A DNA stretch of 64,000 nucleotides from Paramoeba atlantica (GCA_977017575.1 CDRNVI010000143.1:372001-436000); one strand, 5' to 3'. Counted from the stretch's first letter, positions 16,050 through 43,577 are shown. Numbers and translations: made by a program. The notes: generated by a model not told the origin, from the letters alone.

Positions 16050-17729
16050 CTTTTTTTTTTTTTTTACCTTCAATTTTGTGGAACCACTCCACCACACACA
16101 CACCACACCATGTGTATGGAGGTGGTGGGGCAGAAATTGGTCTTATTTTTTGAGGTCATTGTTTGTTCTTTTGTTTTCTCCATCAAAATGGTGTATCTGT
16201 TTGTGGGTCCAGAAAACCAAGAAAAATTTGAAACTTTTTTCAAAAACAATTTTGAAAGTGTCAATCACACTATCATCTTTTTTTGAAGGTTGATGGTGAG
16301 GGTGGTCCTCTTTCATCACCAATGTACCACCATTTTAGAAAGAATGGTATGGTTCTCAAAGATTTATTCTTTCAGTTTCTTTCATTCACAACATCACAGC
16401 CTTTTTTACCTGTTTCTTTGGACAATTTTGCAAGAGCTAAACTACAAAAAGCATTTTTCGATTGTCGAAAAAGCATTTTTCGATTGTCGCAATTTCCAAC
16501 TTCAACCCCCCCCCCCCTCATAATTTGGTGCCTGGTTTCTCTCTCTCTTCCAGACACCCAAGCAAATGGTAGTGTTGACTTATGTTTCTGGACAATCACA
16601 CCTTCCAACAATTTAATAGAGTAAGACCTTTAACTTCTCGAACAGATCTTTCGACTGCACCCAAGAAGCCACCCACACTTTCTTTGGCCAAACCTTTGCA
16701 AATGCATTGACACCTTGCAGTGTTTTTGGACAAAGGGTCATTGAAAAGAAACAAGGAACAACCGCTGACAGATTGCATGCAGGTGGGGTTGCTGAGGATT
16801 AAACAGGGCTTTTCCAAGCAGAACATCCATTGGATGAAGTTTGTCCTTGGCTGGTTTCCTGGGTCTGTTTCTGCCCCCCTCTGGTGGACACTCCATGTTT
16901 TGTCAGTTTGAAGTGAAGCCAGGGCCAAAGTAATATAAGACTTTTATAATATTTGTGCTCCCTCCCTGAGCCAGTTTCCTTTTCCGGCCAAAGTGTCATT
17001 CTTTCTTTTCATCCTTTTTTCTGTTTGTCCCTCTACCACTGTCAATTTTCGGTCTTCCACAGTGAAGCCAGGGCCGAATTATATCAAGGGCTTATATGTG
17101 TATTGCGCTCTGCTGAGGGCATCTGGAATTACTAGTTTGTCTTTCCTGGTTTATGGAGAACTTGTCTCTCTCACCATTTGAGAGATGTTATAATTAACCA
17201 ATTGTTTATCATGCCACTTCTTGATTTCTTCATCGAATTGCTCAAGTCCTTCAAGCTGTGGTGGTTGGTGAATGCAACCACATCACATCCTTTGAATGAA
17301 CTCTTTGAACTTTTCCATCACCCAGTGCAACCCATAACACTCTCTTTTTCTGAGTTAGTGTGTATCCAGTGTGTGAGTTGTTGGAGATCTTTTTCAACCC
17401 CAAAAAAAGAAACACTTTTTCAACGCTGGCGTCGAAAAAAAAGCGAACAAAAAATCTAGGAGTTTTCATTTGAGAAGAGTTGGAGAAGAGTTTACGCGCA
17501 GAAAAGGAACGATTTTTGGCTCAGGGTAGTTCTTTTCTCTGGAAACCACAGGCCTGAAAATTTCTAGGAGAGGTTGGAAGCGCTTTAGATCCACGAGGTG
17601 GACTGAAGTTGTGGAAAACTCATCCTAAAAAGTAAGGAGGATGGAAAGAAAGAGAAAAAAATAAAGGCGGTGACTCAGATAAAAAAAATAATTTATTTTC
17701 GCAAAAAAAGTCTATTTGTTGAGAGCTCT

Positions 17730-20601
17730 CTCCTCTTTCACAACAACAACTGGGGCGACTGGGAGTTTCCAGTTTTCAACCATCCCCCTTGCTGGCCTTC
17801 CATCTTGGTTTCAAAGAAAATAGCCACCAGAAATAGATAACAGTTTTTTTTCCTTGTGAAAATTTGATTTTCACAGGGCCAGTCACTGTCATGGTGGACC
17901 CATCTTGAAAAATTTTCTGAGAGGCAATGACCCCCAACTTCTTTCGTATTTGTGAAGGGAGATCAAGTTGTCCCCAAAATTCTTTCTTCCCAGTTTTCCG
18001 ATTCATTTTGGTTTTGGTAACATTATCATCTACCAAAAAGAAAAAGAGGGCCTCAGGGAAATGTTGAATGAAAACCCGGCGAGAGAACCAATTTTTTGGA
18101 GCTTTTCCCCTCCACTAAAAGAATTTTTGTGTGTGTGAGTGAAAAGAATCTTTTGAAAAAAAAAACTCATGAGAGTGGTTTTTACCAATTTTTCAAGGGT
18201 CTTTGGGATTCTTTGCGCCAGAACACAAGGAACCATTTGTTCATTCGTTCGTTCATCATCATCTCGTGTTCGTTTCCACCTGCTGTTTTTTTCACTCTTT
18301 TTTTTCTGTTTGAAGCGTTTTGCTCTTTCCTAATCAAACAGAGACATTCTTCGGTCTCCCAAGTATCTTCGCTCATTAATTTGTTTTCCATTTCAAGAAG
18401 TTGAAAAATAACACCTCCTCCTCTCCCACACCATCTTGATCCCACCCAAAAATTTTGAGTGAAAAAGAACCCAATTATCATCCTTTTTGGCAATTGAGTT
18501 CATATCTTTTTGCCTTTTCGCGTTTTTTTTGGGGGTCTTTTTTGCCTATCCACTTTGCCACATCACTTCCACAGTCGTGTTTCAGAGCCAAAAAATGCGG
18601 GGGTTGACTTCTGGCTGTGTTCTCTCCCAAGAAATTTTTTTGACCCAAAGTGGTCAATATTGCTCCGTATCCTTTCTTTGAGGCATGGACATGAATGGAA
18701 AAGGTTTTCCTCTGAAATCAAGATGTACCAACACGAGGTATCTCTTTGATTCTTTTCTTCATTCCCTGAAATTCTTTGTCTGTCTGCCTCCTCCGTCCAT
18801 TTTCAGAATTTCTTTTCTTTCAGGAGTTGTCTCATATTAAATGTTCTTTTGTGAGCATTTGTGTAAGAATCTCCGGCACCAGCACTTACAATCCCGAGAA
18901 ATGTCTGTAATTCCTTATGGTGTTGGCTGGTGTTGTGTAATTTCCAATAGCCTCCCCCTTTGACGTTGTTCGCTTCAATACACCTTCTTTGGATGCAGTG
19001 TATCCCAAAAGCATGAATTTCGGTTTGCACAAAATGGGACTTTGGAAATATTGATTCTCACTTTGTGTTTTTCTATTCTTGTCAATATTTCTTGCAGAGT
19101 CTTGTAATGTGTTTTGAAGTCTTTCGAGAAGACAACAATCTAATGAAGAGATCTGCCATCTGAATCTTTTCTCCCATTGTGAGTCTCAGGTCATTATGAG
19201 TTTTCTGTTTATTCAGATTAGTGAGAGGATTTTTTTCTCCTTCTTCTTTCTTATTCTTGATACCTTTTAAGATTCCATCAATTTGTTTGATGAGCTCAGC
19301 ATTTCCTGTTGCATCTTCAGCATCAAGGTTTGCAATTACCTCTTGAAGCCTTCCATTCAATGTTGGAAACATCTCTCAGTCTCTTGTAAACCAGGCCTGA
19401 TCGTCCACCATATCATATTTTGGGTTCTCTCTGACCTCGTTGAAGAACATTCTCACTGTTTCTTCCCGCGGTCGCCCATTTTCCGTTGATCTGGATTTGA
19501 GATCTTTCTTCATGATGGGTGAGGATTTCACATTTGTGGCCTCTGTGATTGGAGTTTCCACACACAAGAAGCAGAGTCGAAGGTTGGAATGGACTTTCAG
19601 TTCTCGCTTTCTCTCTTCTATATTCGTCAGTATCTTTGATTCCCATCTTGGAAAGATCCATCTTAGTGACTCCCTTTGGTGTCTCTATTTTAACAGGTGA
19701 GAGAGAGGCGTTCATGACTTCAACAAAGTCAGTCCATGTTTTTCTGCTTTTGTAAATTTGATACTGAGCCTCTGTTTGAGTGTCCACCTCGATTTTGTGC
19801 TCAATCTCTGAGATGAGTTCCCGGTCTGAGACTTGGTATTGTTTCTTTCCTCTCTTTCTTGAGTAGAGTTTGACAAACTTGAGAGCTTTCTTCTTAAAGG
19901 TCAGATCCCCATAGCTGTCATCAATCCGAAATTGATTATACTGACTGATCGGGTTTCTGTACTCTGGAATCCCCGTAAGCCTCTTGAAGATGTGGGATTG
20001 TCTTTTGGAGGTCATCTTGTGGCACTGCTCCAATTGAGCCCCAGAGGAGAGACACTGCAAGGGAGATCCACCTCCCTTTCAGGACGTCTGCCATTGCGAC
20101 TGTCTTCTCCCACAGGTGGTACTGGCTATGCAATCCTGCACCCAGACACAAAAATTGGCGACTTTGGCCTTGGATCCAAAGTCTGTCTTTCCAACTCTGT
20201 AGTTCGAATTTTGTGTCTATTCTCCTTCAAATCATCTTTTACTCTTCCATCCCTTGTGGTTACTGCCTGGCTGATGGGTTGATTCCCATTCTTACTGAGG
20301 GGGGGTTCCTGATGGGCTTTGTTGAGACCGCTGGGAATAGGTCCTTATCTGAATAGTGATCGATGCCAAAAGCCTCCCTTCCATCTCTGAGAGCATCTCT
20401 TTGGCTTCATCCCTGGTGAAGGTGGGTTCCACTTGGGGGTACCATCCTTTCTCCCTCTGGGGGTTCTTCCTGTTCCTCAAGTTCTTCCTGGTGGAACAGT
20501 TCTCTTTCTTGGGGGTTTTCAGGCTCTTGCCTTTCCTCGGGGTGGGCTCAACCTTCTTGATCACTGCCAGCAGAATCACTATCCCCATCAGGGTTTTCTA
20601 C
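17730..20601 (-). mobile_element. Degenerate Ty3/Gypsy retrotransposon (gag, RT C-terminus, RNase H, integrase relics), interrupted by the MULE
   Basis: Frameshifted remnants HFVQTEI..KELQTFLGIVS..MRQLLKEKKF*KWTEEA (RT/connection), FSIHVHASKKGYGAIL (RNase H) and VHHDS..YFWW (integrase H2C2-like), plus gag-like ORFs at 19082-20588. Confidence 0.75.
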
Positions 20602-20713
20602 GGTACAGGCAGCAAAGTTGATAGTTGCTGTTGTTCGAAAGTTGCTTCAACTTTTCATCAACCCTTATCCTTTTAAAACAACACAAAAACAACGCAATTC
20701 TTTTTGTCAGGAA

Positions 20714-20833
20714 GAAAAAACTTTTTTTGAGACTTTGATGACTAGATAATAAGAGTTGTTTTGAAGTTGTTGAAAAAAACTTTTTTTGAGACTTTGATGA
20801 CTAGATAATAAGAGTTGTTTTGGAGTCGTCAAA
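20714..20833. repeat. 59-bp tandem duplication in the MULE left subterminal region
   Basis: Two copies of AAAAAACTTTTTTTGAGACTTTGATGACTAGATAATAAGAGTTG. The ATAATAAGAGTTG core recurs inverted at 25343-25355 near the right TIR. Confidence 0.9.
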
Positions 20834-21168
20834 AAAAAGAAAATTGATTTTTAATTCATTCCAAAATTCTTTTTTTTATTTTTTCCGTTGCTCTCTCTTC
20901 TTCTTTTTTCCCCGCCGCTTCTAATCTCAGGGGGAAGACAATCAGCTTTTCAATTTCTCTCTTTCTTTCATTTTACCTACAAAGAAAATGGATGTGACTC
21001 TTTTTTGTCTGTTGGGAATTTTGACCGTTGGAGTTGGGATCAACAGCTCTTTTTTTCAACACTTTTTCAATTTCCAATTTAATTTTTCAAGAAAAAACAA
21101 AAAGGTTTGTATTTTTGTTTTGGAGTTTTTTTAATTCCAACTCATGAACATATTTTGTAGAGCTATAG

Positions 21169-23822
21169 ATGTCTTCAATTACATCAATCAAGAAAGGAGA
21201 CTATGTTAAAATCTCCAACTGTGAGGATTATGGATATGTTCAGGATGCTGCCTACTTCCAGAATGAATACCACCTCGCTCTTATCTGGGCAGAAACAGGA
21301 AGAAGAGAAGATGTATCATTTGTTGATATTTCTCTTGTTTCTTGTTTTGAACCAGCCCATGATCAAGGTACGCTTTGCCCAGAGTGCAAAATCCCAATGC
21401 AACAAATGGTTTGCTTTTTTTTTCTTTGACAATTTTAAAGTTTTCTTAAACTAAACTTCTTTTGAATAGATCAACAAAACAACAAGTGAAAAATTTTTGG
21501 CATGTCCATCATATCGCTTGCGATCTGCTCGAAAATGTCGATCGAGAACTATTTCGCTTCCAGACTTCGCGAAAACCCACACTTCAATCAAGCTTGGTGT
21601 TGATGATTGTGATGATACTTGGAACTGGGTACGAGGTCGGCGATCAAACTCAACAGAGGTGGCCATACCAAAATGGGCTCAATTATTGATCCCTGAGGAG
21701 TACCATTCTCAAAAGTTTACCGGTCAGTTATTTCATTGCTCGACTGGGCGATCAAGAAGTCGTCATCGGAAAGATGAAGGCAGGTGCCCTTGGAAAAAGT
21801 TCTTGGTATTTGATTCCCAAGCTTTTTTGAAAGGAACTCCTCCCCCCCAAGATGCGATTTGTACAGTTTATCAAGGGTATGATGGAGAGGGAAATCTTTC
21901 TTCAAAACCTGCTGACCATGCTCTCTGGAACCCAGGGGAACATAAAAAACCTCAAGCAGTGTTAGCAATGAGAAAGGATTGGGTTGAACACCTTGAAAAA
22001 TCGCAAAGTATCACCCCAAGTGAGACAATTCTAAGTTTTCAAGAAAAACTAGTTGAGAGTGATCTCTCTCCATCAACAAAAGCGAATCTCATCCAACAAA
22101 GTTCAAAGATGGGAAATACTTTGAAATATCGGAAACAAAAGGTTTTTTTTTCTTTTTTTCTTTTTTTCTTTTTTTCTTTTTTTTTTTCTTTTTTTTTTTT
22201 TCTTTTTTTTTTTGTGAATCAATTTATATGGATTGATTGAATGTTCTTCCAGCAATCGTTTCAAGAATCACGAATTTCTGATGTTGAGAAAATGGTTCTA
22301 TGCCCTCATACAGGGGAGGTCTCATTCAAATTTGGGTTTGAAGATCATCCCTCTGTCTTCATTGAACTTGGTTCGAAGATCCTAATTGCCAATTATGTAA
22401 AACCAGATATGAAAGAATTTTTCATTGATGGTGTTTTTAAATTATCCCCCTCTCTACAACTGATGATTCTTGGTGTTCCCCTGAGAGGTTTGTTATCTTC
22501 CATTTGAAAAGAAAAGTTTAATTCATTTTCATTTTTTTGATAATTCTTTTTCATGTTAGAGGATACAAAAGATAAAATACATGGAACAAATTTTTGTCCT
22601 CTATCTTGTTTATTAACAAATCGAAAAACTGAATTCACCTATCTCCGGTGGTTTGCTGACCTCAAATATATTGGGTTGGAATTGAATGATTGTTCTATTT
22701 TAACTGATATGGAGTTTGGTATTGGAAATGCAGGTTGATTATTTGAATGACAATTATTTTCTTTTTTTACTTTTATCGATTTGTTTTGTTTTAATAGGAA
22801 AAGTAATGTGGGAGGAGTCTGAATGGAAGTTATGTTACTTCCATGTGATCATGAATGCTAAGGACAAGTTAAAAGCCCTTGGGGTTCCGAAAGAAACTTA
22901 TTCTTTTTATCTTGGGGTATTGAAGGAAATGAAAGAACAAGAAGATGAGAAACAAGCAGAAAATGTATGGGAAAATTTTCAAATTGCTGTTACTTGTCCA
23001 AAAGGAAAGCTTTGGTTTGGATTTTGATTTATTTTATTCTTTTTTTTTTCCTTTGAAAAATGAAACAAGTGTGTAAAGTAAAATTTATATTTTATTTTTT
23101 GTTTTTAGGCTTGAGTATATGGAGAAATGGATAATTCCTCGTTTGTCACAATGGATTGGAGGAAAAACGAATAATTTGATTGAGAGGTTCAATCGATACC
23201 TGAAAGAAACTCTTTTTCGGGGTCAAACATACTCCAATGCTGCAACAGTTGTTGACATCCTTAGTCGATATTTTTCAATTTTAGAAACTGTTTTGGTGCC
23301 CCCACCCAAAGAAGAAGAACATACAAATGAGATTGTTTTCGAGGAACAACTTCTTTTTTCAGAAGAAGTGGACAGGAAAGATACAACAAAACACTTGTTG
23401 GAAAAAAATCTCTCAATTTCTCTCGGAAGAAAGGTTTTTTCTTTATTTTTCATTTTTGAATGATTTTTTTTTAAAATAAAATAATAATGTTATTATTCTA
23501 GACTAGTACAATAAATAAAAGGAAAAGGAGGGATTCAAGCAAAAAAAAAGATGTTTTGGAAACAAGAGAATTTCTCAATCCTCCCCATAATGACTTTGAT
23601 TGTTCGATCGAAGCAGTTGTGCCTCCGCCTTCCTCTTCATCATCTTCCTCTTCTTCATCTTCATCTTCATCTGGTTCCCTTGGTTCATCTGATGCTCCTG
23701 ATTCTCCTGATGATTCTCCTCCTCGAAAGAGAAAACGTTCCCCAATGACAATTCCTGTTGAGGGAAGTGAAACTTGGAGTGAGTCAAGAAAGATTCAGTG
23801 GTTCGCTTCACATGAATTCTAA
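21169..23822 (+). CDS. MULE transposase, 7 exons, 727 aa (21169-21408, 21470-22141, 22253-22487, 22560-22733, 22798-23014, 23109-23433, 23502-23822)
   Basis: Six GT-AG introns (61, 111, 72, 64, 94, 68 nt) join the track ORFs in frame with no stop. MULE motifs: FFIDGVFK (D), ILTDMEFG (D), CYFH, LEYMEKW..KTNNLIERFNRYLK (E). N-terminal CPEC..CPSY..C zinc ribbon. Confidence 0.9.
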
Positions 23823-23983
23823 TGAATGAAATGAAATAAAAGTTTTTATTTTTGAGAATTTTTTTTTATCTTTCCTTCTTTTCTGCACAAGTCATTATTC
23901 TCTTTCTATTCTTTTTTTTTCTTCCAAGTTCTCCATTTATTTTGAATCAATTATACAAAAAAAGTTTGAAGAAGAACAAAGAT

Positions 23984-24952
23984 TTATTTTTTAAATAAAA
24001 GTTTTTTATTTTTTATTTTCCTTCTTTCTTTGCTTCTTTTCTGCAGGTGACATTCTCTTTTTTTTTTTTTTGGTGGTTCCTTCACATTCGGGATGGTTCG
24101 ACTTCCAAAATCTTCACGCAACATTGTATCCCACTCCACACCACGCAACTTTAAAAAGGTTCGGTGAAGAACAAAGATTCCAACCATACGATCATCTTCA
24201 TGAGGAAAGAAAGGGTCTTCATCACCCTGATAGTCTCGACTCCCATGCCAAAGTGCATCAGAGTCCAACATCAAAACATCTCCAACTCTAATATTGAACG
24301 CTCTCTTAGATCCTCCAATTTCAAGAGCTCCTCCAGTCGAATTTGGGTTCACATGGACTCCAAAAATAAATGCAACATAATCAAATGAGTCCTTGTGAAA
24401 CAAACTGAATCCAAGAGGGGAGAGAAATAAATGAAACAAGCCAAAATTTGAACATAATTGGTTCTCGCCCTTCAAAAGGTTGTAGATATCCGGTCGTTTC
24501 TCTTTCACCAACAAAGTTGCCTTTTCTCCAAGTCTCTCCAAAACTGGAGTCAATATTGGATATTGTAGCTTATCTTCATATTTCCCTCCAAATCCAGCTG
24601 GATAAGTTGGATCCCCAGGGTTACAATGGCCTTGAGCAGGCCACACTCCCATGATAGTTTCAGGACGATCTCCGCGTTTGTCCTCTTTTCTTTTCCAATA
24701 ATCGCAAGAATGAAGAGTTTCGTGGAGCATCTCCATTTCTTTCACAGAAAAAAACTGTTTTACAAAGTGAGCTCGATTCACTTTTCCATCTCGAGTCTGA
24801 ACCTCAACATACACATTCTTGTTGTGGATATAACAACGATCAGCAGTTTCCCGTTGCAAATCTTCCTCTGACTCGGTAAAGACCACTCGATCTCTTGGTG
24901 TTTTCAATGATCCTCTTTTTCGGTTTGAAACTTCATCCTCTTTGTTACTCAT
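23984..24952 (-). CDS. TET/JBP-like 2OG-Fe(II) dioxygenase, 322 aa
   Basis: HxD triad start FHKDSFD, GGALEI strand, GDVLMLDSDALWHG (distal His) and downstream RMVGIF (2OG-binding Arg). Spacing resembles the Tet_JBP family as I recall it; no HMM search was run. Confidence 0.75.
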   Translation of the reverse strand: MSNKEDEVSNRKRGSLKTPRDRVVFTESEEDLQRETADRCYIHNKNVYVEVQTRDGKVNRAHFVKQFFSVKEMEMLHETLHSCDYWKRKEDKRGDRPETIMGVWPAQGHCNPGDPTYPAGFGGKYEDKLQYPILTPVLERLGEKATLLVKEKRPDIYNLLKGENQLCSNFGLFHLFLSPLGFSLFHKDSFDYVAFIFGVHVNPNSTGGALEIGGSKRAFNIRVGDVLMLDSDALWHGSRDYQGDEDPFFPHEDDRMVGIFVLHRTFLKLRGVEWDTMLREDFGSRTIPNVKEPPKKKKRECHLQKRSKERRKIKNKKLLFKK

Positions 24953-25422
24953 CGTGAAACTTCTGTGTTTCTACAACTTTCCAAAAAGAATGAAAATTTC
25001 AAACAGAAAAAAGAAAGAGACAAAGAAAAGAGAGAAAAGACAAGAAAGAGAGAAGAGAGAGAGAAAGAAGAAAACAGAAAGAAAACTTTTCCAAGAAAAA
25101 TTCACGGGATTTAGTTTTCTATTTTTTTTCACCAAAAAAGAAAAAAAAATTGTCCCCTTTGAAAAGAATAAATTTTATTTTCAGGACCCTAAATTAAATT
25201 GTGCTTCAAAGTGTTTTTTGTGGCTTTGAAAGAGTCCTTTTGAAAACAACTTTTCGCCTGCTCATATCATAAGGTCTGGTCTATTTCATTCATTTTTCTT
25301 GTGGAAGTAGGAATAAATCAAATTGTGCCAGCAACTTTTCAGCAACTCTTATTATGGATAAAGATGACATCATCAAATACTTCTTTTTCTCAACCGCAAC
25401 TATCAACTTTGCTGCCTGTACC

Positions 25423-25750
25423 GTTTTCTACCAAGTAAGTCTCCTTTAACTCATCCCAGAAAAGAGCCATCGATCTACCAGCATTGCCAATGTAAAAACT
25501 GAAAACAAAGTGGTGTGTGAAAAACTGATCTTTAGAAACCAAAAGGGAAAACGACAAAAGAAAAGCGCATCGCGTCGCGTCGCCTTTGTGATGTCATCAA
25601 ACAGTCCCTATCAAGGGTGTTCAGTGAAGTTGGCTGAAAGTTGGGCCGAAAGTTCAAGGGTTAAAAATAGCCTTTATTCACAATCTCTTCACGGTATCCT
25701 CCCAATCAAGTTTTTTTCCCAAATAAATGATTTCTGTTATATGTTGTGAG
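25423..25750 (-). mobile_element. 5' part of the Gypsy relic split by the MULE (gag start, candidate PBS, LTR end)
   Basis: ATG at 25470 reads MALFWDELKETYLVEN and continues in frame across the empty site into PDGDSDSAGSDQEG at 20592. Upstream is ..TTTTTACA-T-TGGCAATGCTGG (LTR end plus PBS-like). The outer boundary is uncertain. Confidence 0.6.
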
Positions 25751-28700: not shown

Positions 28701-28874
28701 ATTTTAAAATTGAATTGTGGAACTAATTTGGAAGAGAGGAAGGGATTTTTTATTATTCTTTTTCATTTTCTCCCTTTTTATTTTCTCTTCTTCAAGAGGG
28801 TTTTTGTTTTTTTTGATTTTTTTTGATTGATTTTTTTGGTAATCCTTCTTACTTTGTTTCTCTCTTTCAACAAA

Positions 28875-28946
28875 TCCCCGATAGTATAGTTGGCAAAATC
28901 CCCGCCTGTCACGCGGGAGTCCCAGGTTCGATTCCCGGTCGGGGAG
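28875..28946 (+). tRNA. trnD: tRNA-Asp(GTC), with stem mismatches
   Basis: TCCCCGA/TCGGGGA-G acceptor and CCCGC-CT-GTC-AC-GCGGG anticodon arm. A.C mismatch in the T-stem and a weak D-stem. Confidence 0.85.
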
Positions 28947-30125
28947 GATTTTTTTTTCTCTTTCTCTTTCTTTTTCTTTTTTTTGATTCAATCCAAAAAT
29001 ACATGAAAAAAAGAGGAATTCTTCAAATTTTGTGTCTTCAAAAGATCAAAGTGATATGGTTTTTTTCTTTTTTTCTTTTTTTTTTTCTCTCTTCTCTTTT
29101 TTCTCTTCTATTTTTATTTTTTGATTCTCTCTCCTTTTTTCTGATTTCTTTGAACTCACACTAATAATAATAAATCACAAGATATGAAAGGGTCTCTGTT
29201 TTGCAAACTCCAATGCCTATGGTGATCTCTTCTTTCTCCTCTTTTGGGTTTCCTCTTTCTTTTCTTCTTTTCTCTTTCTATCTTCTTTTATCCATTTTGT
29301 TGTTTTTCTTTTTGTTTTGATTTTAGGATTGGTTTTTTCCATTCTTCATCCTTTTTTCCCAAAAAATTTTTTGTTGAAGAAAGACTTATTTTTATAATTG
29401 AAGTCAAAAACAAGAAAATGTTGAAAAAATCAGAGGAGCAACTCACCCAAAAATGAGAAAAAGAGAGAGAAGAGGATGCAAGATCTATTTTTCAACATAA
29501 AAAAAAAGATGAATAATTCTCAAAAAAAAATAAGGAACTTTAAAACAAACTCAAAAACAAATTGGATTAAAACAAAATAAAAAGAACCAAAAAATCAAAC
29601 CCCAAATTATTTTTTGGAACAGTACTTTTTGTGATATCATAAAACTTCAACAGCCACAAAGTTCAACTTCAATTGGTCTCTTCTATTGCAAAGTGAACAA
29701 TCACCATATATTCACCCTTGACAACAATCATTCTCTTGCCAACAAAAAATTGAAATCATCTCATGTGAAAAATTTTCGCTTCCACAGATTGTGTATGAAA
29801 ATCTTTTGTTTTTTCTTATTCACCAGATCAAAAGCTGTTTGAAAATCTTCCTCTTAGTGAGTTGTTTCAAAAATTTTGGTCCATTCTCCAATTACTTTGT
29901 TGTGCAATGGAAGAGGGCCTTTCATTTTTTGGAAAGAAATTTTTTTTACCCCTTTTCTGTTTCTTTCCAAGCAATTTGTTACCATCACCCAAAAAAAAGA
30001 GAAAAACAGAGAAAACCAAATTTTTCCAAAATGAATTTGAGTGTCACACAACAAACTTCAATTGGAGCAAAAGAGTGTTTGGGGAAACTTTTTTTCTTTT
30101 TTTTTTTGAAAATTAAAAAAAAAAA

Positions 30126-37001: not shown

Positions 37002-37192
37002 TGTAAAATGATAGTTTTTACAGTGAATAATAAAAGCAATCAAAATGTTGTTGTGCAATTTGAGAATTTGAAAAGTGAACGTTGGACCGTTTCAGAATTT
37101 GGCGGTTCCACGTCAGCACTCATTCTCCTTTATTTAGTAAATCAAAAAGGCATAGATGTCTTTATCAAGGAGTCGTCGATTTCTCCGTTGCA
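37002..37192 (-). repeat. 3' LTR (191 bp)
   Basis: Direct repeat of 43387-43577. Confidence 0.97.
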
Positions 37193-40100
37193 TCCTCCCA
37201 CGCGATGAGAACCTCGGCTCCTCAGATATTTCTGAAGATGAAGGAGGGGAAGAAGGAGTAGACTCATTAGCAGGTTGACCAGTTGGAACAGTTGTTGGTG
37301 AAGCCACTCGGGATTCTTCACGATCAGCACCAAGTATATCAAAGTTGATGGGGTTATGCAGATGATAATCATCTAAGAGCTCCTCAGCATCAACATCACT
37401 TGCTCGGCACCATTCAGCTGATGTTTTTCGGAATCCTTTAAATTGAATCTTGTAAAAGAGTTCTCCATTACGAACAGCATGGTTCAGGATTTTTTCAATC
37501 TCAAAATCATATCCGTGATCGTCGAAGGAGACGTTCTCCGGTCCAGAGGAGTCTTCAAGACCAATTTCGTTCGACCCAGGGTCCAGGTTAATCTCATGAC
37601 GGAATTGGAGTTTCTTGATAATTGAGATGTTTGCTTTGAATGGAGGATCTTTTCGGGATAGATCTTGTAATGTATAACTTCCATTCTCATAATCTCCCAC
37701 AACCATATACACTTTTCGATGGAATAAGGCTCGATATTTCTTTCCAAGATCAGCTTCATCCGTAGTTGTTCCGAATTTTCTTAACAATACATGGTCACCA
37801 ATTTTGAGTTGTGCGATCCTTGACTTATGAGTTCGATTATAGAGTTCAGATTGACTTTCAGCAACTCGCAATCGTTCAGCTCGAACCCACTCAATGACTC
37901 TATCTCGGTCGGTTTGGAGTTTGCTCACATATTCATCTCTGGTCACATACGGCCGATAGACTGACCCATACATCATATCGAGAGGCATAATTGGTGGTCG
38001 TCCAAAATGTACTTGAAAGGGCGTATATGTGGTTGATGAAGATCGAGAGGTATTGAAGGCAAACTCAACTAAAGGCACTAATAAATCCCAGTCATCTCTA
38101 AATTTGTCCACGTAGGCTCGTAGGATTGACTTGGTGACTTTGTGTGTCCATTCTACTCGACCATTGCTCTTAGAGTTATAAGGAGAAATTGTGGTTTGTT
38201 TCAATCCCATCAAATTAGATAATTCAGTAAAGAGTTCGTTCGCAAATTCAGGTCCGTTGTCAGTAACGATCTTCAATGGCATTGAATTTACGCAAATGTA
38301 CTGCAATAAAGCTCCAGCGGCGTCCTTCGCAGTGGGCTGAGGGATTGGATATAACCTCAGATATCCAGAAAAGTTATCCACAATTGCCAATAAATGAGTA
38401 TTTCCCCTGGCTGAAGTCTTTGGGCCTTTTGTACAATCAAGGTGGACAGTGACTCCAGGGTATGAAGCCATATATGGGTTCAATTCGGATGTCAAGGTCT
38501 TTCCTTTTGAATTGATTGCACAATTCAAGCATCGATGACAATAGCCTTTAATATAAAGGGACATACCTGGAAAATAATAAGAAGCAGCAATTGCTTGATA
38601 GAGACGTTCATACTTCCGATGTCCAGAGACAAGGGAGTCATGATAGGCCTTTAGGACATCATCCCAAAGTGCTCGAGGTAATACAGCGGGAGGTCCGGTC
38701 TCGGCTGGAGCTGATTCATCAATCTTTCTTAAAATACCATTCGCATCGATCCAGTATTTGAATGCTTGTCTTTGCAGCATTCTAAGTTCTGACCGGCGTT
38801 TTGGGAGTATCCCATAAAGGTAGTTGATGATTTTTGAGCAAAACTTGTCATATCTTTGGGCTCGAGCCAAGAAAGGAAGCGGAACAAGAAGACGGTCTAT
38901 GGTGTCTCCATCGACCTCTATGGTGTCCTCCCCTTGAGAAAGTTCTTCGCCTTTTTGCCAAAGCGTTCTGACCTCAGGGAGATCAAATGTTTGGTCTGGT
39001 GAAGAATCAATTGCCTCTATTTTTTCAAGGATATCTTTTTGTCTCGACATTGCTCTGCTTTTTGACGTTTCGTCTAGCGCGAGGTCAATTATTTTTTCGA
39101 AACAATTTGTCATGTAATCTTTCTTTTCATCTTTGTTGTCTTTGTATCCAACAAAGTGCCTACTCAACGCATCTGGAATAGCCATCAGCTTTCCAGGTTT
39201 ATGTATGACGAGAGGATTATATTCTAATGTTCGGGCAACCCAATCACGCAACATTGCATGTTCAGGGATTTTTGTTCCAGTTCTTGAGAAGACCGAGCGC
39301 AGAGCTTGACAATCGCAAACTACAATCGGTTCTCTTCCGTGAACATAATACTTAAAGTTTTTTAAAGCCCAAATAATTCCTAATCCTTCTCTGACAGGAT
39401 TAGTATATTTTTGTTGAGTCGGTGTTAATGCCTTTGAAGCATACTCGATTACTCTGTGATAACCTTTGTCATCTAATTGTGTTAGGATAGCTCCAAGACC
39501 TCGAGAACTAGCATCAACATGGATGAAGAATCTTTTTGAGAGATCTGGATGTGCTACACAGGTTTCTTTTTTGAGTATGTCTTTCAGTATTTGAAATTCT
39601 TCTTCAGCTTTTTCTGACAGGAAAAATCTCGATTCTTTTAATGTTTTTGCTTTTCTTAGATGAAAAGTTAATTTGGAGAGGTTTGGTATGAATCTTTTCA
39701 ACCAAGTAACCATTCCTATAAATATCTCAACCTCCTTTGGTGATTTTGGAAGGGGATAATTTTGGATTGCTTCAACCTTTTTTGGATTTGGTGATAAACC
39801 ATCCTTTGTAGCGACAAAGCCAAGTATTTCAAAAGTTGGTTTACAGAAAGAACATTTTAAAGGTTGTAAAATTAAATTATGTTCCTTTAGTCTTCCTAGT
39901 ATATCCCTCAAGTCTTCTAAATGTTTTTCAAAGGAATTGCTGAAACATATAATGTCATCGACATATGCAAAACAGCATCTCCATATGAGTCCATTCAATA
40001 CAGCTTCAATATAACGTTGTTGTGTTGCTGGAGCATTACACAATCCAAATGGCATTGAGAGAAATTCCCAAAGTCCATATTTGCTTGTAAAAGCTGTTTT

Positions 40101-43100
40101 TTCAACATCTTGTTGTCGGATCGGAATTGACCAAAAGGCGTCCGTCAGATCAATTGATGAGAAATATGAGGAATTGCCAAGGGCTCCAAGAATTGTATCC
40201 ATTCTTGGAAGAGGATATGCATCCTTCTTTGTGACATTATTAAGACGACGAAAATCAACACAAAATCGGATTTTGCCATTCTTTTTGTCTGCCAATAGAA
40301 TTGGTGAAGCCCATGGTGAGGTTGAAGGTTGAATTACTTTTCTTTTCACCATTTTATCAATATGTTTCCAAATAATGTAATCTTCAGCAGGAGTTGTTTT
40401 TCGAGGAACTGTGCGAACTGGTTTAGCAGTTGCATCAGTTTCGATCTTATGCTCCGTTGCTGTTGTTCGGGTCAATGGACCTTCTCTTTTTTGTTCATCC
40501 CAAAGGTCTTTAAATTCAGTTAGCAGTTCTGCTAATTTAATTTGTTGTTGAGAATTCAAGTTTGTAGCATTGATTTGAAATGTCTCATATGCTTCTTTTA
40601 ATTCAGATTTCATTTGATTTTCTTCACCAAAATCCGGTGGTTCATTTTCTGGATTTGCAAGGAGAGCAAAAACTTGATTTATCTTTGATTCGTCAAAAGC
40701 ATCTGTTTCCATTGTTGGATTTATTTTGGGTTGTTTTTGACTTTGAATCGGGGAGATTTCTTCTGCAAAATTTTCTGAAAATTTGCGTTTTCGTCCCTCT
40801 TTAAGAAACAACATCTTATTTTCTTTAGCAACCCAAGCGTCAAGCCAAGGGCTGTTGAGAGCTTTAAAATAGTTTGCTCCCACTTTTGAATTAAATGGTT
40901 TCTTTTCTTTTGATTTTTGATCTTGTTCTTTTGTATTCACCTTTTTTACAGGTTGAATATCTTGAAGATCAAGGAGCGAACGATTTGATATTTGAAGAAG
41001 TTCTGTTTGTTCAACATCATCATCGTTAATCTCATGTATGGAACCAAGTTCCCATCCTTTTTTAAGTTTTACATATTTGTTTGTTGGATTAATTACCAAT
41101 ATGTTTGATTGATAGATGTTTTTCTTTCTTCCAGGTCTTTCTTTTTGGGTAATTGAGATAAGACCTTGTGGAGCAATTAATTTGCCTTTTCCACTATCTC
41201 TTGGAAAGAAGAAACATTCCGGTGATGAGACTTGTCCTTTTGCTGTGAGTGGCACTATCACAGCCGATCTTGGGGGAATGCCACTGGTTACTGCCGTTGT
41301 GACCAGGGTCTTACTTCTCCGGTTCCTTCTGTCATCAAGAAGTTCCAAGTCCGGACTAAGTTCATTCATTTGAAGATTATTTTCTTTTGGCTTTGCCTGA
41401 ACAAGCTTTTTTTCTTGCCACAGAATATAATCGCCATCCGTTCCAAGTTTTAGTCTTTTCATAGCTGGCCAGCCTATCAAAGTTTGGACAGGAAGGTGGT
41501 CGAATATGAAGAACCATAAATTGGCTTCAAAATGTGAGAATTTTACTCTCAGTAAAACTTCTTCATTTACAACAACTTTGGAAGAATTTCCAACTGTGAC
41601 TTTTAAAGTATGGATTTTTCTTCTTCTTAATATTTGAATACCAGGTCTTTTTAATTGTTGTAAACTGATTGCATTAATTCCAGATCCTGTGTCGAGGCAT
41701 GTTGTTGAATTTAGATTGCCTATTTTCGACTCAAATTCCAGAGGTCCCCCGACATCACGGCTTTCTTCTCCTTTTTGTTCAATTTGACTTAAGGAGAGGA
41801 TGCGGATGGGTTCTGAATTGGTTAATTCTGGAGAATTAATTGCCATTTTGTAATGTTCGGTTGGGATATCATGGACATCCATAAATTGTCTATTTTCTTT
41901 CTCTTGTGTATTTTCTTTCTCTTGTGGAGAAGGATTTTTACTTGAATTTTTACAAGAAAGATCAGAATACGGTGTATCATGATTTATTGGAGTTTGTTGA
42001 GTTTGACCACTACTTTGTATGAAGAGACTTTTCAATTCATTGAATTGTTGGTTCATCTTTTCATCCATTTTGTGGGCAAATTCTTCAAATTCTTGTTTTC
42101 TTTTTTTATGTGGGTCTTGGTCTCTATTTGAACCTTGACCTTGTTGTTTTTGTTGTCCTCTTGGACCTTGATCTTTCAACCCTCTTTTCCTTTTTCTGGT
42201 TACTTTGCAGCGTTGCGTAATGTGGGTGTCTTGATTACCACAATGGCGGCAATATTTCAACCCTTTTTGCATCGCTTCTTTCACCAAAGGACAATTTTTG
42301 GGTACATGACCAAAGTCTTCACAGGCTCGGCATTGCAACTCCCGTGCCCTCTTTCTCGCCTCTTTCAGCTCTTGTCCATTAGGGTTCAAGGCTAATGAAA
42401 GGGAGTTTCGGGTCTTATCAGCGAGTTGTTTTGTTGGGTAGTCCTTTTGGTACTGGACAGTCAGAGCAATAGAAAGCATGTCGCCTCCTTTAGCTGTAGC
42501 TTTCGCTCCCTCCCATGCCCGATGGTACGAAGAATCTTGTACTCGGGCTTCGAAAATGTCTCTAACTTCTTCGAGTTGGGTGTCCTCACTCCCCTTTTCC
42601 TTGACAGCAATGTTCAAGAACTTCATTGTATGAGTCATGAAGTCCTCAGAGATATCGAACTTGTACGAGTAAAGAGCACTTGTATCAGTATCAAGGGGTT
42701 TGTAAACGTGACTTGAAGCCATACAGAGATCAAAAACCAACTTCTGGAAGGTTTGAGGATGACCGATGATGTCAAGTCCGAATGCTATCAACTTGGGTCG
42801 TGCGAGGGTTACAGCGAGTTCATTATTTGGCCACCCATTGGTTTTCCAAACTTGATAAAGAGCATCAAGCTTTTCTGTTTTGGTTAGATTCTTTGAGAGG
42901 CCATCGATCGCTCTTTCGATTGATTGTTGGAGAGCTTTGTCAGCCACAAAGGATTTCTCGTCCGGTATCGGTACCAAAGCATCCTTTCCCAAACGATGGT
43001 TTTGCGTTGTTGAAGATGAAGAGATACTTTGATCGAGTTCTTGGATCAGAGTTCGTCTCGCACCCACATTTGAAGCAGCAACCACGACTTTGGGCAGGGG

Positions 43101-43373
43101 AATCAATTCAACTTTGCCTTTGTCATTGACCTTTTGCTGGTAAAGGGTGCCATTTATGACTACTAGTTGCATTTCCGAGGAATCGGGAAGACCAGAAGGA
43201 TCAGAATGAAGGGGAGAGGGGGTACTAGAATCAAGAGGGGAATCACTTTCAGCGCTGGGAGTTTCGCCAAGAGAAGGAGGACTGAGCTTGGGCGTTCCAG
43301 GATGTTTCTTAGGCGACTTTTTCGTCTTACCAGGGGTCTCTCCTTCTTGTTTCTTATCTTTATCCTTTCCCAT
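37134..43373 (-). CDS. Gag-Pol polyprotein, 2079 aa (CCHC knuckles, PR, dUTPase-like insert, RT, RNase H, IN, chromodomain)
   Basis: CEDFGHVPKNC knuckle, CLDTGSG (protease), RFCVDFRRLN/YVDDI (RT), IHVDASSRGLGAIL (RNase H), HDSLVSGH..CHRC, VHLD/VTDNGPEF/GRVE (integrase) and FEIEKIL..FYKIQFKGF..EW (chromodomain). Real start is MGKDKD at 43373. Confidence 0.97.
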   Translation of the reverse strand: MGKDKDKKQEGETPGKTKKSPKKHPGTPKLSPPSLGETPSAESDSPLDSSTPSPLHSDPSGLPDSSEMQLVVINGTLYQQKVNDKGKVELIPLPKVVVAASNVGARRTLIQELDQSISSSSTTQNHRLGKDALVPIPDEKSFVADKALQQSIERAIDGLSKNLTKTEKLDALYQVWKTNGWPNNELAVTLARPKLIAFGLDIIGHPQTFQKLVFDLCMASSHVYKPLDTDTSALYSYKFDISEDFMTHTMKFLNIAVKEKGSEDTQLEEVRDIFEARVQDSSYHRAWEGAKATAKGGDMLSIALTVQYQKDYPTKQLADKTRNSLSLALNPNGQELKEARKRARELQCRACEDFGHVPKNCPLVKEAMQKGLKYCRHCGNQDTHITQRCKVTRKRKRGLKDQGPRGQQKQQGQGSNRDQDPHKKRKQEFEEFAHKMDEKMNQQFNELKSLFIQSSGQTQQTPINHDTPYSDLSCKNSSKNPSPQEKENTQEKENRQFMDVHDIPTEHYKMAINSPELTNSEPIRILSLSQIEQKGEESRDVGGPLEFESKIGNLNSTTCLDTGSGINAISLQQLKRPGIQILRRRKIHTLKVTVGNSSKVVVNEEVLLRVKFSHFEANLWFFIFDHLPVQTLIGWPAMKRLKLGTDGDYILWQEKKLVQAKPKENNLQMNELSPDLELLDDRRNRRSKTLVTTAVTSGIPPRSAVIVPLTAKGQVSSPECFFFPRDSGKGKLIAPQGLISITQKERPGRKKNIYQSNILVINPTNKYVKLKKGWELGSIHEINDDDVEQTELLQISNRSLLDLQDIQPVKKVNTKEQDQKSKEKKPFNSKVGANYFKALNSPWLDAWVAKENKMLFLKEGRKRKFSENFAEEISPIQSQKQPKINPTMETDAFDESKINQVFALLANPENEPPDFGEENQMKSELKEAYETFQINATNLNSQQQIKLAELLTEFKDLWDEQKREGPLTRTTATEHKIETDATAKPVRTVPRKTTPAEDYIIWKHIDKMVKRKVIQPSTSPWASPILLADKKNGKIRFCVDFRRLNNVTKKDAYPLPRMDTILGALGNSSYFSSIDLTDAFWSIPIRQQDVEKTAFTSKYGLWEFLSMPFGLCNAPATQQRYIEAVLNGLIWRCCFAYVDDIICFSNSFEKHLEDLRDILGRLKEHNLILQPLKCSFCKPTFEILGFVATKDGLSPNPKKVEAIQNYPLPKSPKEVEIFIGMVTWLKRFIPNLSKLTFHLRKAKTLKESRFFLSEKAEEEFQILKDILKKETCVAHPDLSKRFFIHVDASSRGLGAILTQLDDKGYHRVIEYASKALTPTQQKYTNPVREGLGIIWALKNFKYYVHGREPIVVCDCQALRSVFSRTGTKIPEHAMLRDWVARTLEYNPLVIHKPGKLMAIPDALSRHFVGYKDNKDEKKDYMTNCFEKIIDLALDETSKSRAMSRQKDILEKIEAIDSSPDQTFDLPEVRTLWQKGEELSQGEDTIEVDGDTIDRLLVPLPFLARAQRYDKFCSKIINYLYGILPKRRSELRMLQRQAFKYWIDANGILRKIDESAPAETGPPAVLPRALWDDVLKAYHDSLVSGHRKYERLYQAIAASYYFPGMSLYIKGYCHRCLNCAINSKGKTLTSELNPYMASYPGVTVHLDCTKGPKTSARGNTHLLAIVDNFSGYLRLYPIPQPTAKDAAGALLQYICVNSMPLKIVTDNGPEFANELFTELSNLMGLKQTTISPYNSKSNGRVEWTHKVTKSILRAYVDKFRDDWDLLVPLVEFAFNTSRSSSTTYTPFQVHFGRPPIMPLDMMYGSVYRPYVTRDEYVSKLQTDRDRVIEWVRAERLRVAESQSELYNRTHKSRIAQLKIGDHVLLRKFGTTTDEADLGKKYRALFHRKVYMVVGDYENGSYTLQDLSRKDPPFKANISIIKKLQFRHEINLDPGSNEIGLEDSSGPENVSFDDHGYDFEIEKILNHAVRNGELFYKIQFKGFRKTSAEWCRASDVDAEELLDDYHLHNPINFDILGADREESRVASPTTVPTGQPANESTPSSPPSSSEISEEPRFSSRGRMQRRNRRLLDKDIYAFLIY

Positions 43374-43384
43374 TGGAGCCTCCA
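43374..43384 (-). promoter_or_regulatory. Primer-binding site, tRNA-Thr-type
   Basis: TGGAGGCTCCA, 2 nt after the 5' LTR, is complementary to a tRNA 3' end TGGAGCC-U73-CCA, typical of Thr isoacceptors. Confidence 0.75.
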
Positions 43385-43386
43385 AA

Positions 43387-43577
43387 TGTAAAATGATAGT
43401 TTTTACAGTGAATAATAAAAGCAATCAAAATGTTGTTGTGCAATTTGAGAATTTGAAAAGTGAACGTTGGACCGTTTCAGAATTTGGCGGTTCCACGTCA
43501 GCACTCATTCTCCTTTATTTAGTAAATCAAAAAGGCATAGATGTCTTTATCAAGGAGTCGTCGATTTCTCCGTTGCA
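43387..43577 (-). repeat. 5' LTR (191 bp)
   Basis: Direct repeat of 37002-37192. Confidence 0.97.

What the first reader, a model, noticed from the sequence alone, without database searches (positions are those of the whole stretch)
23984..24952. Dioxygenase keeps the full Fe/2OG ligand set, is intronless and has a basic C-tail
Seen in sequence: H-K-D-x-x-D, GG-x-L, GDVLMLD..WHG and R-x-x-x-F motifs in an open 322-aa frame with a K/R-rich (NLS-like) tail. It has no introns while the neighbouring transposase has six. Inference: it was captured from a different source (retrocopy, or viral/bacterial TET/JBP) and is maintained by selection.
Basis: partly seen in the sequence, partly recalled or inferred. 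Interest (0 to 1): 0.75.

Follow-up and report, generated by a model that had tools for sequence, protein, structure and literature searches.

The report
Jumping gene carrying a TET-type dioxygenase
The 322-residue gene is an intact TET/JBP-type DNA-base oxidase carried as the second gene of a young Mutator-type jumping gene, probably to resist cytosine-based silencing, a kind of cargo so far published only for fungal transposons.

Summary
Window 23984-24952 (minus strand) is an uninterrupted 322-aa frame. Its H186-x-D188, H236 and R255 are invariant or nearly so across 49 relatives.

Pfam does not recognise the protein directly. An alignment-based AlphaFold model (pLDDT 89) has the four solved TET/JBP proteins (TET2, NgTET1, CcTet, CMD1; Z 16-18) as its best matches among 48,161 chains. 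A profile of the family also hits NgTET1.

The gene lies inside a complete 4,821-bp Mutator-like transposon (20602-25422). The element has 32-nt inverted ends, a perfect 9-bp target duplication and a convergent multi-exon transposase. Four other copies of the family carry the same gene.

- No close viral or bacterial relative was found, and there is no retrocopy mark.
- The nearest relatives are also intronless, and one sits beside a piggyBac transposase.

Selection shows only at family level. Older copies are dead, with dN/dS of 0.8-0.9. About 90% of their changes are C-to-T and nearly every CpG is destroyed. That fits an anti-methylation or anti-hypermutation role, but the role is inferred.

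This scan already noted TET-carrying transposons of several superfamilies elsewhere in this genome.

The parts
20593..20601 (.). Left copy of the 9-bp target-site duplication (GTTTTCTAC)
   Evidence: Read directly; identical to 25423-25431.
20602..20633 (+). Left terminal inverted repeat, 32 nt (31/32 match to the right end)
   Evidence: Homology of the independent copies L002 and L007 stops exactly at 20602.
20715..20838 (+). Subterminal tandem repeat (about 59 bp x 2); a related inverted motif lies at 25329-25355. Possible transposase-binding sites (inferred).
21169..23822 (+). Mutator-like transposase gene in 7 open coding blocks (about 21169-21426, 21470-22237, 22241-22504, 22544-22735, 22704-23024, 23077-23460, 23502-23819). 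It shows the D (FIDGVF), D (ILTDMEF), C-x2-H (CYFH) and E (TNNLIERFN) motifs and a basic C-end.
   Evidence: Exon-by-exon Pfam scans were negative. There is a weak language-model lead to SWIM-domain proteins. Splice sites are unresolved.
23984..24952 (-). ORF2: 322-aa TET/JBP-like Fe(II)/2-oxoglutarate dioxygenase, convergent with the transposase
24380..24397 (-). H186-K-D188-S-F-D191: two iron ligands, plus the Asp at the position that binds N4 of 5-methylcytosine in NgTET1 (D234), CMD1 (D350) and TET2 (N1387)
   Evidence: residue roles from PMC7854593 and PMC11040006.
24245..24247 (-). H236, the third iron ligand
   Evidence: 48/49 conserved; aligned to the NgTET1 distal His.
24164..24190 (-). 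R255 (2-oxoglutarate C5-carboxylate binder) to H263 (R+8, the position of NgTET1 H297 and TET2 H1904, which contacts the flipped base)
24953..25390 (-). Upstream region of ORF2 up to the right end, with a purine-rich low-complexity tract; presumed promoter (inferred).
25391..25422 (-). Right terminal inverted repeat
   Evidence: Homology of copy L009 stops exactly at 25422.
25423..25431 (.). Right copy of the 9-bp target-site duplication

Best explanation
ORF2 is a divergent member of the TET/JBP branch of the Fe(II)/2-oxoglutarate dioxygenases. It is the second, convergently oriented gene of an autonomous, recently inserted Mutator-like DNA transposon (20602-25422).

Shown: the fold, the intact metal and 2OG site, its place between the element's ends, and its presence in every copy of the family.

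Inferred: basic N- and C-terminal stretches take the protein into the nucleus. There it binds Fe(II) through H186, D188 and H236 and binds 2OG through R255. It flips a 5-methylcytosine into the pocket (D191 to N4, H263 to the ring) and oxidises it. That would remove or mask the methyl mark on the element's own DNA. The element would then escape transcriptional silencing, the methylation-linked C-to-T hypermutation that has destroyed the older copies of this family, or both.
For: Fold and family:
- The alignment-based AF2 model has pLDDT 89 and pTM 0.83.
- The top 25 Foldseek PDB hits are all TET/JBP.
- An exhaustive VIA-align search of 48,161 chains ranks TET2 (Z 18.3, 242 aligned), NgTET1 (17.8), CcTet (16.8) and CMD1 (16.0) first; the next chain scores 14.9.
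- Viral and ESM Atlas structure hits are Tet_JBP clusters.
- The family profile hits NgTET1 at E 1.5e-4 and aligns HxD, H and R.
- 12 of 49 family members hit Pfam Tet_JBP, and P0112 passes the curated cut-off.
- 27 of 30 language-model neighbours are Tet_JBP clusters.

Active site: H186 and D188 are kept in 49/49, H236 in 48/49, R255 in 46/49, D191 in 47/49 and H263 in 31/49. The roles of the equivalent residues are taken from PMC7854593 and PMC11040006.

Transposon context:
- TIRs and a perfect 9-bp TSD.
- Homology of three other copies stops exactly at the two ends.
- ORF2 is present in copies L002, L007, L008 and L009.

Defence context: differences from the old copies are about 90% C>T or G>A in the direction window to copy. 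In L007 this is 283 of 311 changes. At least 88% of CpGs are lost (63/63 in L007). All premature stops in the ORF2 copies are C>T products. The mutated sites are mostly independent between copies.

Precedent: fungal transposons of 11 lineages carry TET/JBP genes, and an anti-methylation or anti-hypermutation role has been proposed for them (PMC12730594).
Against:
- Pfam Tet_JBP does not hit this protein even at E<=1.
- The aromatic residue that stacks under 5mC in TET2, NgTET1 and CMD1 (R+6) is V261 here and aliphatic in most of the family.
- C-to-T decay also hits non-CpG cytosines at 13-17%. It could come from a deaminase acting on unmethylated C, against which a 5mC oxidase would be useless.
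- I did not show that the host methylates DNA.
- Copy-to-copy dN/dS is near 1.
Confidence: 0.6

Rival explanations
1. It is a TET/JBP-type enzyme working on DNA, but on another base or with another outcome. Candidates are thymine hydroxylation (as in JBP), N6-methyladenine demethylation (as in CcTet), or a protective hypermodification (as in CMD1 or the phage enzymes) that shields the element's DNA rather than demethylating it.
For: Known TET/JBP members do all of these. The stacking aromatic is replaced by V/I in this clade, so the pocket differs from canonical TETs. The sequence is too divergent for Pfam.
Against: D191 occupies the position whose Asp/Asn side chain binds cytosine N4 and clashes with 6mA; CcTet has Gly there. 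Thymine O4 pairs poorly with that Asp. R255 is kept, as in 2OG users, unlike the displaced Arg of the vitamin-C user CMD1. No glycosyltransferase or other partner gene lies in the element.
Confidence: 0.2
2. One reading: the gene was recently captured by this element from outside the transposon pool, either as a retrocopy of a host gene or from a virus or bacterium, which would explain the missing introns.
For: It is intronless beside a gene with at least 6 introns. The nearest language-model and structure neighbours in the Atlas and BFVD are mostly phage Tet_JBP clusters. The TET/JBP family as a whole is thought to stem from phage-bacterium conflicts (PMC12730594).
Against: No viral or prokaryotic sequence relative was found by pattern plus tblastn. 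There are only 121 relatives among 1.84 billion representatives. The closest ones are intronless genes on eukaryote-like contigs, one next to a piggyBac transposase and one next to a possible hAT remnant. In the tree the window protein nests inside that clade. There is no poly(A) tail or flanking repeat. The phage resemblance is at the level of fold (10-19% identity).
Confidence: 0.07
3. It is a 2OG dioxygenase of the general fold that acts on a non-DNA substrate (protein, RNA or a small molecule), or it is a functionless passenger that is intact only because this copy is young.
For: Copy-to-copy dN/dS is 0.78-0.94. AlkB, prolyl hydroxylases and other 2OG oxygenases also match at Z 12-15. No functional data exist.
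Against: TET/JBP structures stand 1-3 Z units above all others and have 30-60 more aligned residues. Catalytic and base-contact residues are kept across a family of 18-45% identity spread over different transposons; a functionless passenger would not show that. The near-neutral dN/dS reflects C>T hypermutation of dead copies.
Confidence: 0.1

Closest known systems
TET/JBP-encoding ('TET+') DNA transposons of fungi (Iyer et al. 2014; Kojima 2025, PMC12730594)
   Same: A cut-and-paste DNA transposon carries, beside its transposase, a separate TET/JBP dioxygenase gene. One dioxygenase clade is shared among different transposon superfamilies: here Mutator and, for relative P0003, piggyBac. The host shows C-to-T hypermutation of repeats, as in rust fungi.
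   Different: Mutator/MuDR is not among the 11 published carrier lineages. A 2019 survey of Mutator elements lists no dioxygenase cargo. Other notes of this scan call the host an amoeba, which I did not verify. The protein falls below Pfam's Tet_JBP threshold.
Naegleria NgTET1 (PDB 4lt5, 5cg8) and human TET2 catalytic domain
   Same: Same fold (Z 17.8-18.4), HxD...H iron triad, Arg for the 2OG C5 carboxylate, Asp/Asn three residues after the HxD Asp, and His eight residues after the Arg. Like NgTET1 it is a minimal, single-domain enzyme of about 300 aa.
   Different: 12-15% identity. The stacking Phe/Tyr is replaced by Val/Ile. There is no Cys-rich or CXXC domain. It is carried by a transposon rather than being a host gene.
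VANC anti-silencing proteins of Arabidopsis VANDAL (Mutator-family) transposons
   Same: A Mutator-superfamily element carries an extra gene whose proposed job is to undo DNA-methylation silencing of its own family (PMC12730594 introduction; titles).
   Different: VANC is a sequence-specific DNA-binding protein, not an enzyme of this fold. There is no homology.
Maize MuDR (mudrA/mudrB) two-gene architecture
   Same: Two convergently transcribed genes, each reading inward from one terminal repeat, with 9-bp target duplications (from my own knowledge of MuDR; TSD range cited in PMC6446971).
   Different: mudrB is not a dioxygenase, and the terminal repeats here are short (32 nt versus about 200 nt).

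Membership tests
TET/JBP dioxygenases (Pfam PF12851 clade of 2OGFeDO) | Double-stranded beta-helix fold whose closest solved relatives are TET/JBP enzymes | tested here: met
   Model pLDDT 89. The top four of 48,161 chains are TET2, NgTET1, CcTet and CMD1, Z 16.0-18.3; the next chain scores 14.9. The top 25 Foldseek hits are all TET/JBP.
TET/JBP dioxygenases (Pfam PF12851 clade of 2OGFeDO) | HxD...H iron-binding triad and the distal Arg that binds 2-oxoglutarate | tested here: met
   H186 and D188 are kept in 49/49, H236 in 48/49 and R255 in 46/49. They align to the NgTET1 motif residues.
TET/JBP dioxygenases (Pfam PF12851 clade of 2OGFeDO) | Significant match to the curated family model | tested here: inconclusive
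   The query itself has no Pfam hit at E<=1. 12 of 49 relatives hit Tet_JBP, and P0112 passes the cut-off (45.7 versus 34.9 bits) while also matching the query profile at E 1.6e-5. The family profile hits NgTET1 at E 1.5e-4.
TET/JBP dioxygenases (Pfam PF12851 clade of 2OGFeDO) | Residues that hold the flipped 5mC: Asp/Asn at HxD+3, His at Arg+8, aromatic at Arg+6 | tested here: inconclusive
   D191 (47/49) and H263 (31/49; Gln in 10) are present. The aromatic is V261 (Ile or Val in 39/49), with F260 one residue earlier.
TET/JBP dioxygenases (Pfam PF12851 clade of 2OGFeDO) | Oxidation of a methylated base in DNA | not testable with these tools
   Needs a biochemical assay.
Mutator-like elements (MULE/MuDR superfamily) | 8-11 bp target-site duplication and terminal inverted repeats | tested here: met
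   Perfect 9-bp TSD and 32-nt TIRs (31/32) in the window. A second insertion, L002, is also flanked by a 9-bp repeat at its intact end. The TSD range comes from PMC6446971.
Mutator-like elements (MULE/MuDR superfamily) | [quoted passage not shown] | tested here: inconclusive
   The motifs are seen by eye in the right order. Exon-by-exon Pfam scans were negative. There is a weak lead to SWIM-domain proteins.
TET+ DNA transposons | The dioxygenase gene lies between the element's ends and travels with it in several copies | tested here: met
   ORF2 or its remains sit at the same internal position in L002, L007, L008 and L009.

The most novel reading that the evidence does not exclude
A non-fungal eukaryote (an amoeba, according to unverified notes of this scan) runs a RIP-like, CpG-first C-to-T hypermutation defence against repeats. 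Several unrelated DNA-transposon superfamilies, here Mutator, have answered by passing around one divergent clade of TET/JBP oxidases as counter-defence. That would be an arms race parallel to, and independent of, the one proposed for rust fungi. This element would be an intact, possibly still active, experimental handle on it.
Probability: 0.4. Interest if true: 0.7.

Novelty: new member of a known kind. Interest (0 to 1): 0.5.

Why it matters
Transposon-borne TET/JBP genes are the clearest candidates for enzymatic counter-silencing by mobile DNA, but none has been tested, and published cases are confined to fungi. This case offers three things:
- an intact, very young copy in a Mutator element, a carrier superfamily not yet reported;
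- dead sister copies that record what the host does to the family: C-to-T hypermutation that erases nearly every CpG;
- a small, single-domain enzyme of 322 aa that should be easy to express and assay.

It also shows that Pfam misses a whole TET/JBP clade of about 120 representative clusters.

Tried and rejected
- Direct Pfam and PDB sequence searches of ORF2 found nothing.
- The single-sequence AlphaFold model was useless, with pLDDT 36.
- Word-index homologue searches gave only 2, 6 and 2 hits. The tree covers the family only and is rooted on its Pfam-positive distant members.
- The search for related loci rejected the 49-sequence alignment. With an 8-sequence alignment it found no relative in viral, prokaryotic or JGI metagenome contigs. 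These scans rest on one or two short patterns, so they exclude close relatives only.
Two local scripts had still read files that included them: BLAST of the element against loci already fetched; profile scan of window ORFs.
- Exon-by-exon Pfam scans of the transposase were negative. Enumerating GT-AG introns gave 18-32 frame-keeping candidates per junction, so exact exons are left open.
- tblastx of the transposase region against the relatives' contigs found no related transposase.
- Pfam on the neighbours of other relatives was uninformative, apart from piggyBac in L003 and a weak precomputed hAT-like hit in L013.
- Metagenome contig pairs encoding identical proteins differ by 0-1 nt, so they give no dN/dS test.
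- I did not verify the host organism. Run names are coded, and the scan's notes disagree ('amoeba', 'protist', 'animal').

Full report
**Observation**

The frame at 23984-24952 on the minus strand is a real ATG-to-stop ORF of 322 codons. The only correction is that the last one is R255-x4-F260.

Direct searches were blank:
- Pfam gave no hit even at E<=1.
- The PDB sequence search gave nothing.
- The word-index protein search found only a 95%-identical fragment, P0001, and one 40%-identical metagenome protein, P0002.

**What the protein is**

A profile of the query plus P0002 was scored against 1.84 billion cluster representatives. It found 121 relatives, 45 of them at E<1e-30.

In an alignment of 49 of them (18-45% identity to the query), conservation of the key residues is:

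| Residue | Kept in |
|---|---|
| H186, D188 | 49/49 |
| H236 | 48/49 |
| R255 | 46/49 |
| D191 | 47/49 |
| G208, G224, D225 | at least 46/49 |

Links to the TET/JBP family by sequence:
- The alignment's profile has the Naegleria Tet-like dioxygenase as its best PDB hit (E 1.5e-4). HKDxxD aligns to NgTET1 HKDNLD, GDV...H to its distal His, and R-x7-H to its R289...H297.
- Twelve of the 49 members hit Pfam Tet_JBP.
- One of them, P0112, passes the curated cut-off and also matches the query profile.

Evidence from structure:
- With the alignment, AlphaFold gives a confident model (pLDDT 89, pTM 0.83). The single-sequence model was useless.
- The top 25 Foldseek PDB hits are all TET/JBP enzymes.
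- An exhaustive VIA-align search of 48,161 chains puts the four TET/JBP representatives first: TET2 (Z 18.3, 242 residues, 3.5 A), NgTET1 (17.8), CcTet (16.8) and CMD1 (16.0). They stand ahead of a generic 2OG oxygenase (14.9) and AlkBH3 (14.0).
- BFVD and ESM Atlas neighbours are Tet_JBP clusters.
- 27 of 30 language-model neighbours are too.

**Active-site reading**

According to PMC7854593 and PMC11040006:
- The residue three after the HxD Asp (NgTET1 D234, CMD1 D350, TET2 N1387) hydrogen-bonds N4 of 5mC and excludes 6mA. CcTet has Gly there.
- The Arg (R289/R1896) holds the 2OG C5 carboxylate.
- A His eight residues later (H297/H1904) contacts the base.
- An aromatic six residues later stacks under the base.

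Here D191, R255 and H263 fit. The stacking position is V261, and it is aliphatic in most of the family. This points to a cytosine-type substrate and to 2OG as co-substrate, with a somewhat different pocket. It rests on a sequence alignment, not on coordinates.

**Context**

The gene sits inside a complete transposon:
- The ends are 32-nt inverted repeats, 20602-20633 and 25391-25422, matching at 31 of 32 positions.
- They are flanked by a perfect 9-bp duplication, GTTTTCTAC.
- Similarity of three other copies stops exactly at 20602 (L002, L007) and at 25422 (L009).

On the plus strand, seven open blocks between 21169 and 23822 carry, in order, FIDGVF, ILTDMEF, CYFH and TNNLIERFN. That is the D-D-CxxH-E layout of Mutator-type transposases, and the blocks need at least six introns.

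Pfam did not recognise single exons. A language-model search gave only a weak lead to SWIM-domain proteins.

The transposase and ORF2 are convergent, with 161 bp between their stop codons, each reading inward from one end. From my own knowledge, this is as in maize MuDR.

**Other copies and selection**

One ENA assembly (ERZ24900291) holds four more copies:

| Copy | Identity to window | State |
|---|---|---|
| L002 | 99% | internal deletion of the transposase 5' half; truncated at ORF2 codon 29/30 |
| L007 | about 91% | decayed |
| L008 | about 92% | decayed |
| L009 | about 95% | decayed |

All four contain ORF2 or its remains at the same position, so it is a standing part of the family and not a one-off capture.

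In the three older copies ORF2 is broken by stops and indels. dN/dS against the window copy is 0.78, 0.94 and 0.86. Against L002 there are 3 synonymous changes and 1 non-synonymous change.
- In L007, 283 of 311 substitutions are C>T or G>A in the direction window to copy. Only 12 run the reverse way and 16 are transversions.
- 63 of 63 comparable CpG dinucleotides are destroyed, and non-CpG cytosines are hit at 13-17%.
- L008 and L009 show the same pattern.
- The mutated non-CpG sites are mostly different between copies: 36 shared against 23.5 expected.
- Every premature stop in ORF2 is a C>T product, such as CGA>TGA or CAG>TAG.

So the old copies were killed by a cytosine-directed hypermutation process, and the window copy is simply young and unhit. 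Purifying selection is visible only at family level, in the invariant catalytic residues across transposon-borne relatives.

**Origin**

The relatives whose contigs I fetched are all single uninterrupted frames:
- P0003, the best hit of the profile search, lies 150 bp downstream of a piggyBac-type transposase (PF13843, E 5e-32).
- P0126 lies beside ORFs with a weak hAT-like mark.
- P0004 lies beside an unassigned 1,037-aa ORF.

In a maximum-likelihood tree the window protein sits in a 99%-supported group with P0006, P0009 and P0014. That group lies inside a 98%-supported clade that includes P0003 and P0004.

Pattern plus tblastn scans found no relative in IMG/VR, in 185,579 prokaryotic species genomes or in JGI metagenome contigs. 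The 3' flank has AATAAA-like signals but no poly(A) remnant.

The simplest account is that an already intronless, transposon-borne dioxygenase moved between transposon superfamilies, as Kojima (2025) describes for fungi (PMC12730594). A deep phage ancestry of TET/JBP as a whole is not excluded.

**Mechanism**

Shown:
- a TET/JBP fold with a complete Fe/2OG site;
- residence in a structurally complete Mutator-like element;
- cytosine-directed hypermutation of sister copies.

Inferred:
- nuclear import through the basic N-terminal patch, which is conserved in the family, and the C-tail, which is not conserved;
- oxidation of 5mC on the element's DNA;
- relief from silencing, from 5mC-dependent C>T mutation, or from both.

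Weak points:
- There is no expression or activity data.
- I did not show that the host methylates DNA.
- Non-CpG C>T decay could come from a deaminase acting on unmethylated cytosine.

**Comparison and novelty**

Published TET-carrying transposons belong to 11 lineages in three fungal groups, and Mutator/MuDR is not among them. A 2019 survey of 1,631 Mutator elements lists no dioxygenase cargo.

Notes from other agents of this scan report TET-like cargo in P-like, CACTA-like, Transib-like and Mutator-like elements elsewhere in this same genome, and CpG-first C>T decay of its repeats. I confirmed the Mutator case and the decay on this family. I did not check the other elements or the host name those notes give.

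I therefore file this as a new member of a known kind: a new carrier superfamily, probably a new host group, and a TET/JBP clade that Pfam misses.

**Limits to declare**

I worked beside those places afterwards. Two local scripts still read files that contained them.
- The sequencing runs that hold the element are coded.

Noticed in passing
L007, L008, L009 versus window 20602-25422: Old copies of this transposon family differ from the young one almost only by C>T/G>A (about 90% of changes), with at least 88% of CpGs destroyed (63/63 in L007) and 13-17% of other cytosines hit, mostly at different sites in each copy. This is a RIP-like or methyl-cytosine deamination signature.
   Followed up: yes
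window 11917-11925; L002 9994-10002 and 12800-12808: The contig behind L002 is a 97%-identical counterpart of window 1190-19895 and carries a Mutator copy where the window has an uninterrupted site (CTCCTTTAT once). In L002 that 9-mer flanks the copy on both sides, although the copy's ORF2-side end is truncated inside codon 29/30 and about 390 bp of adjoining flank is missing. The history is unresolved; interrupted gap repair after excision or a deletion with templated filler are possibilities.
   Followed up: partly
window 1190-7600 and 55908-62346: Both stretches match the same part of L002 (1-6441/8213) at 97%, so the window holds a large internal duplication about 55 kb apart.
   Followed up: no
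window 37134-43424 (-): An uninterrupted 2,096-aa ORF with reverse transcriptase, RNase H, integrase and chromodomain: an intact-looking Ty3/Gypsy chromovirus-type retrotransposon.
   Followed up: partly
L003 1144-3897: On a JGI metagenome contig the best hit of the profile search (P0003) lies 150 bp downstream of, and on the same strand as, an intact 563-aa piggyBac-type transposase: a second carrier superfamily for this dioxygenase clade.
   Followed up: partly
L004 142-3255 and L005 2-2482: A 1,037-aa ORF with no clear Pfam family (only a sub-threshold YagK_YfjJ_C hit) sits directly upstream of dioxygenase P0004 on two contigs from different samples; it may be an unclassified transposase.
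   Followed up: no
window 24001-24090 versus L002 10775-10886: A 1-nt indel in the A-rich 3' end of ORF2 gives the sister copy a different C-terminal tail that is still K/R-rich. The basic tail therefore partly reflects purine-rich DNA rather than a conserved signal.
   Followed up: partly
window 28823-29164: ORF translations here contain the ...GSIPG... string typical of a tRNA-derived repeat read through in protein frame; possibly a SINE-like element.
   Followed up: no
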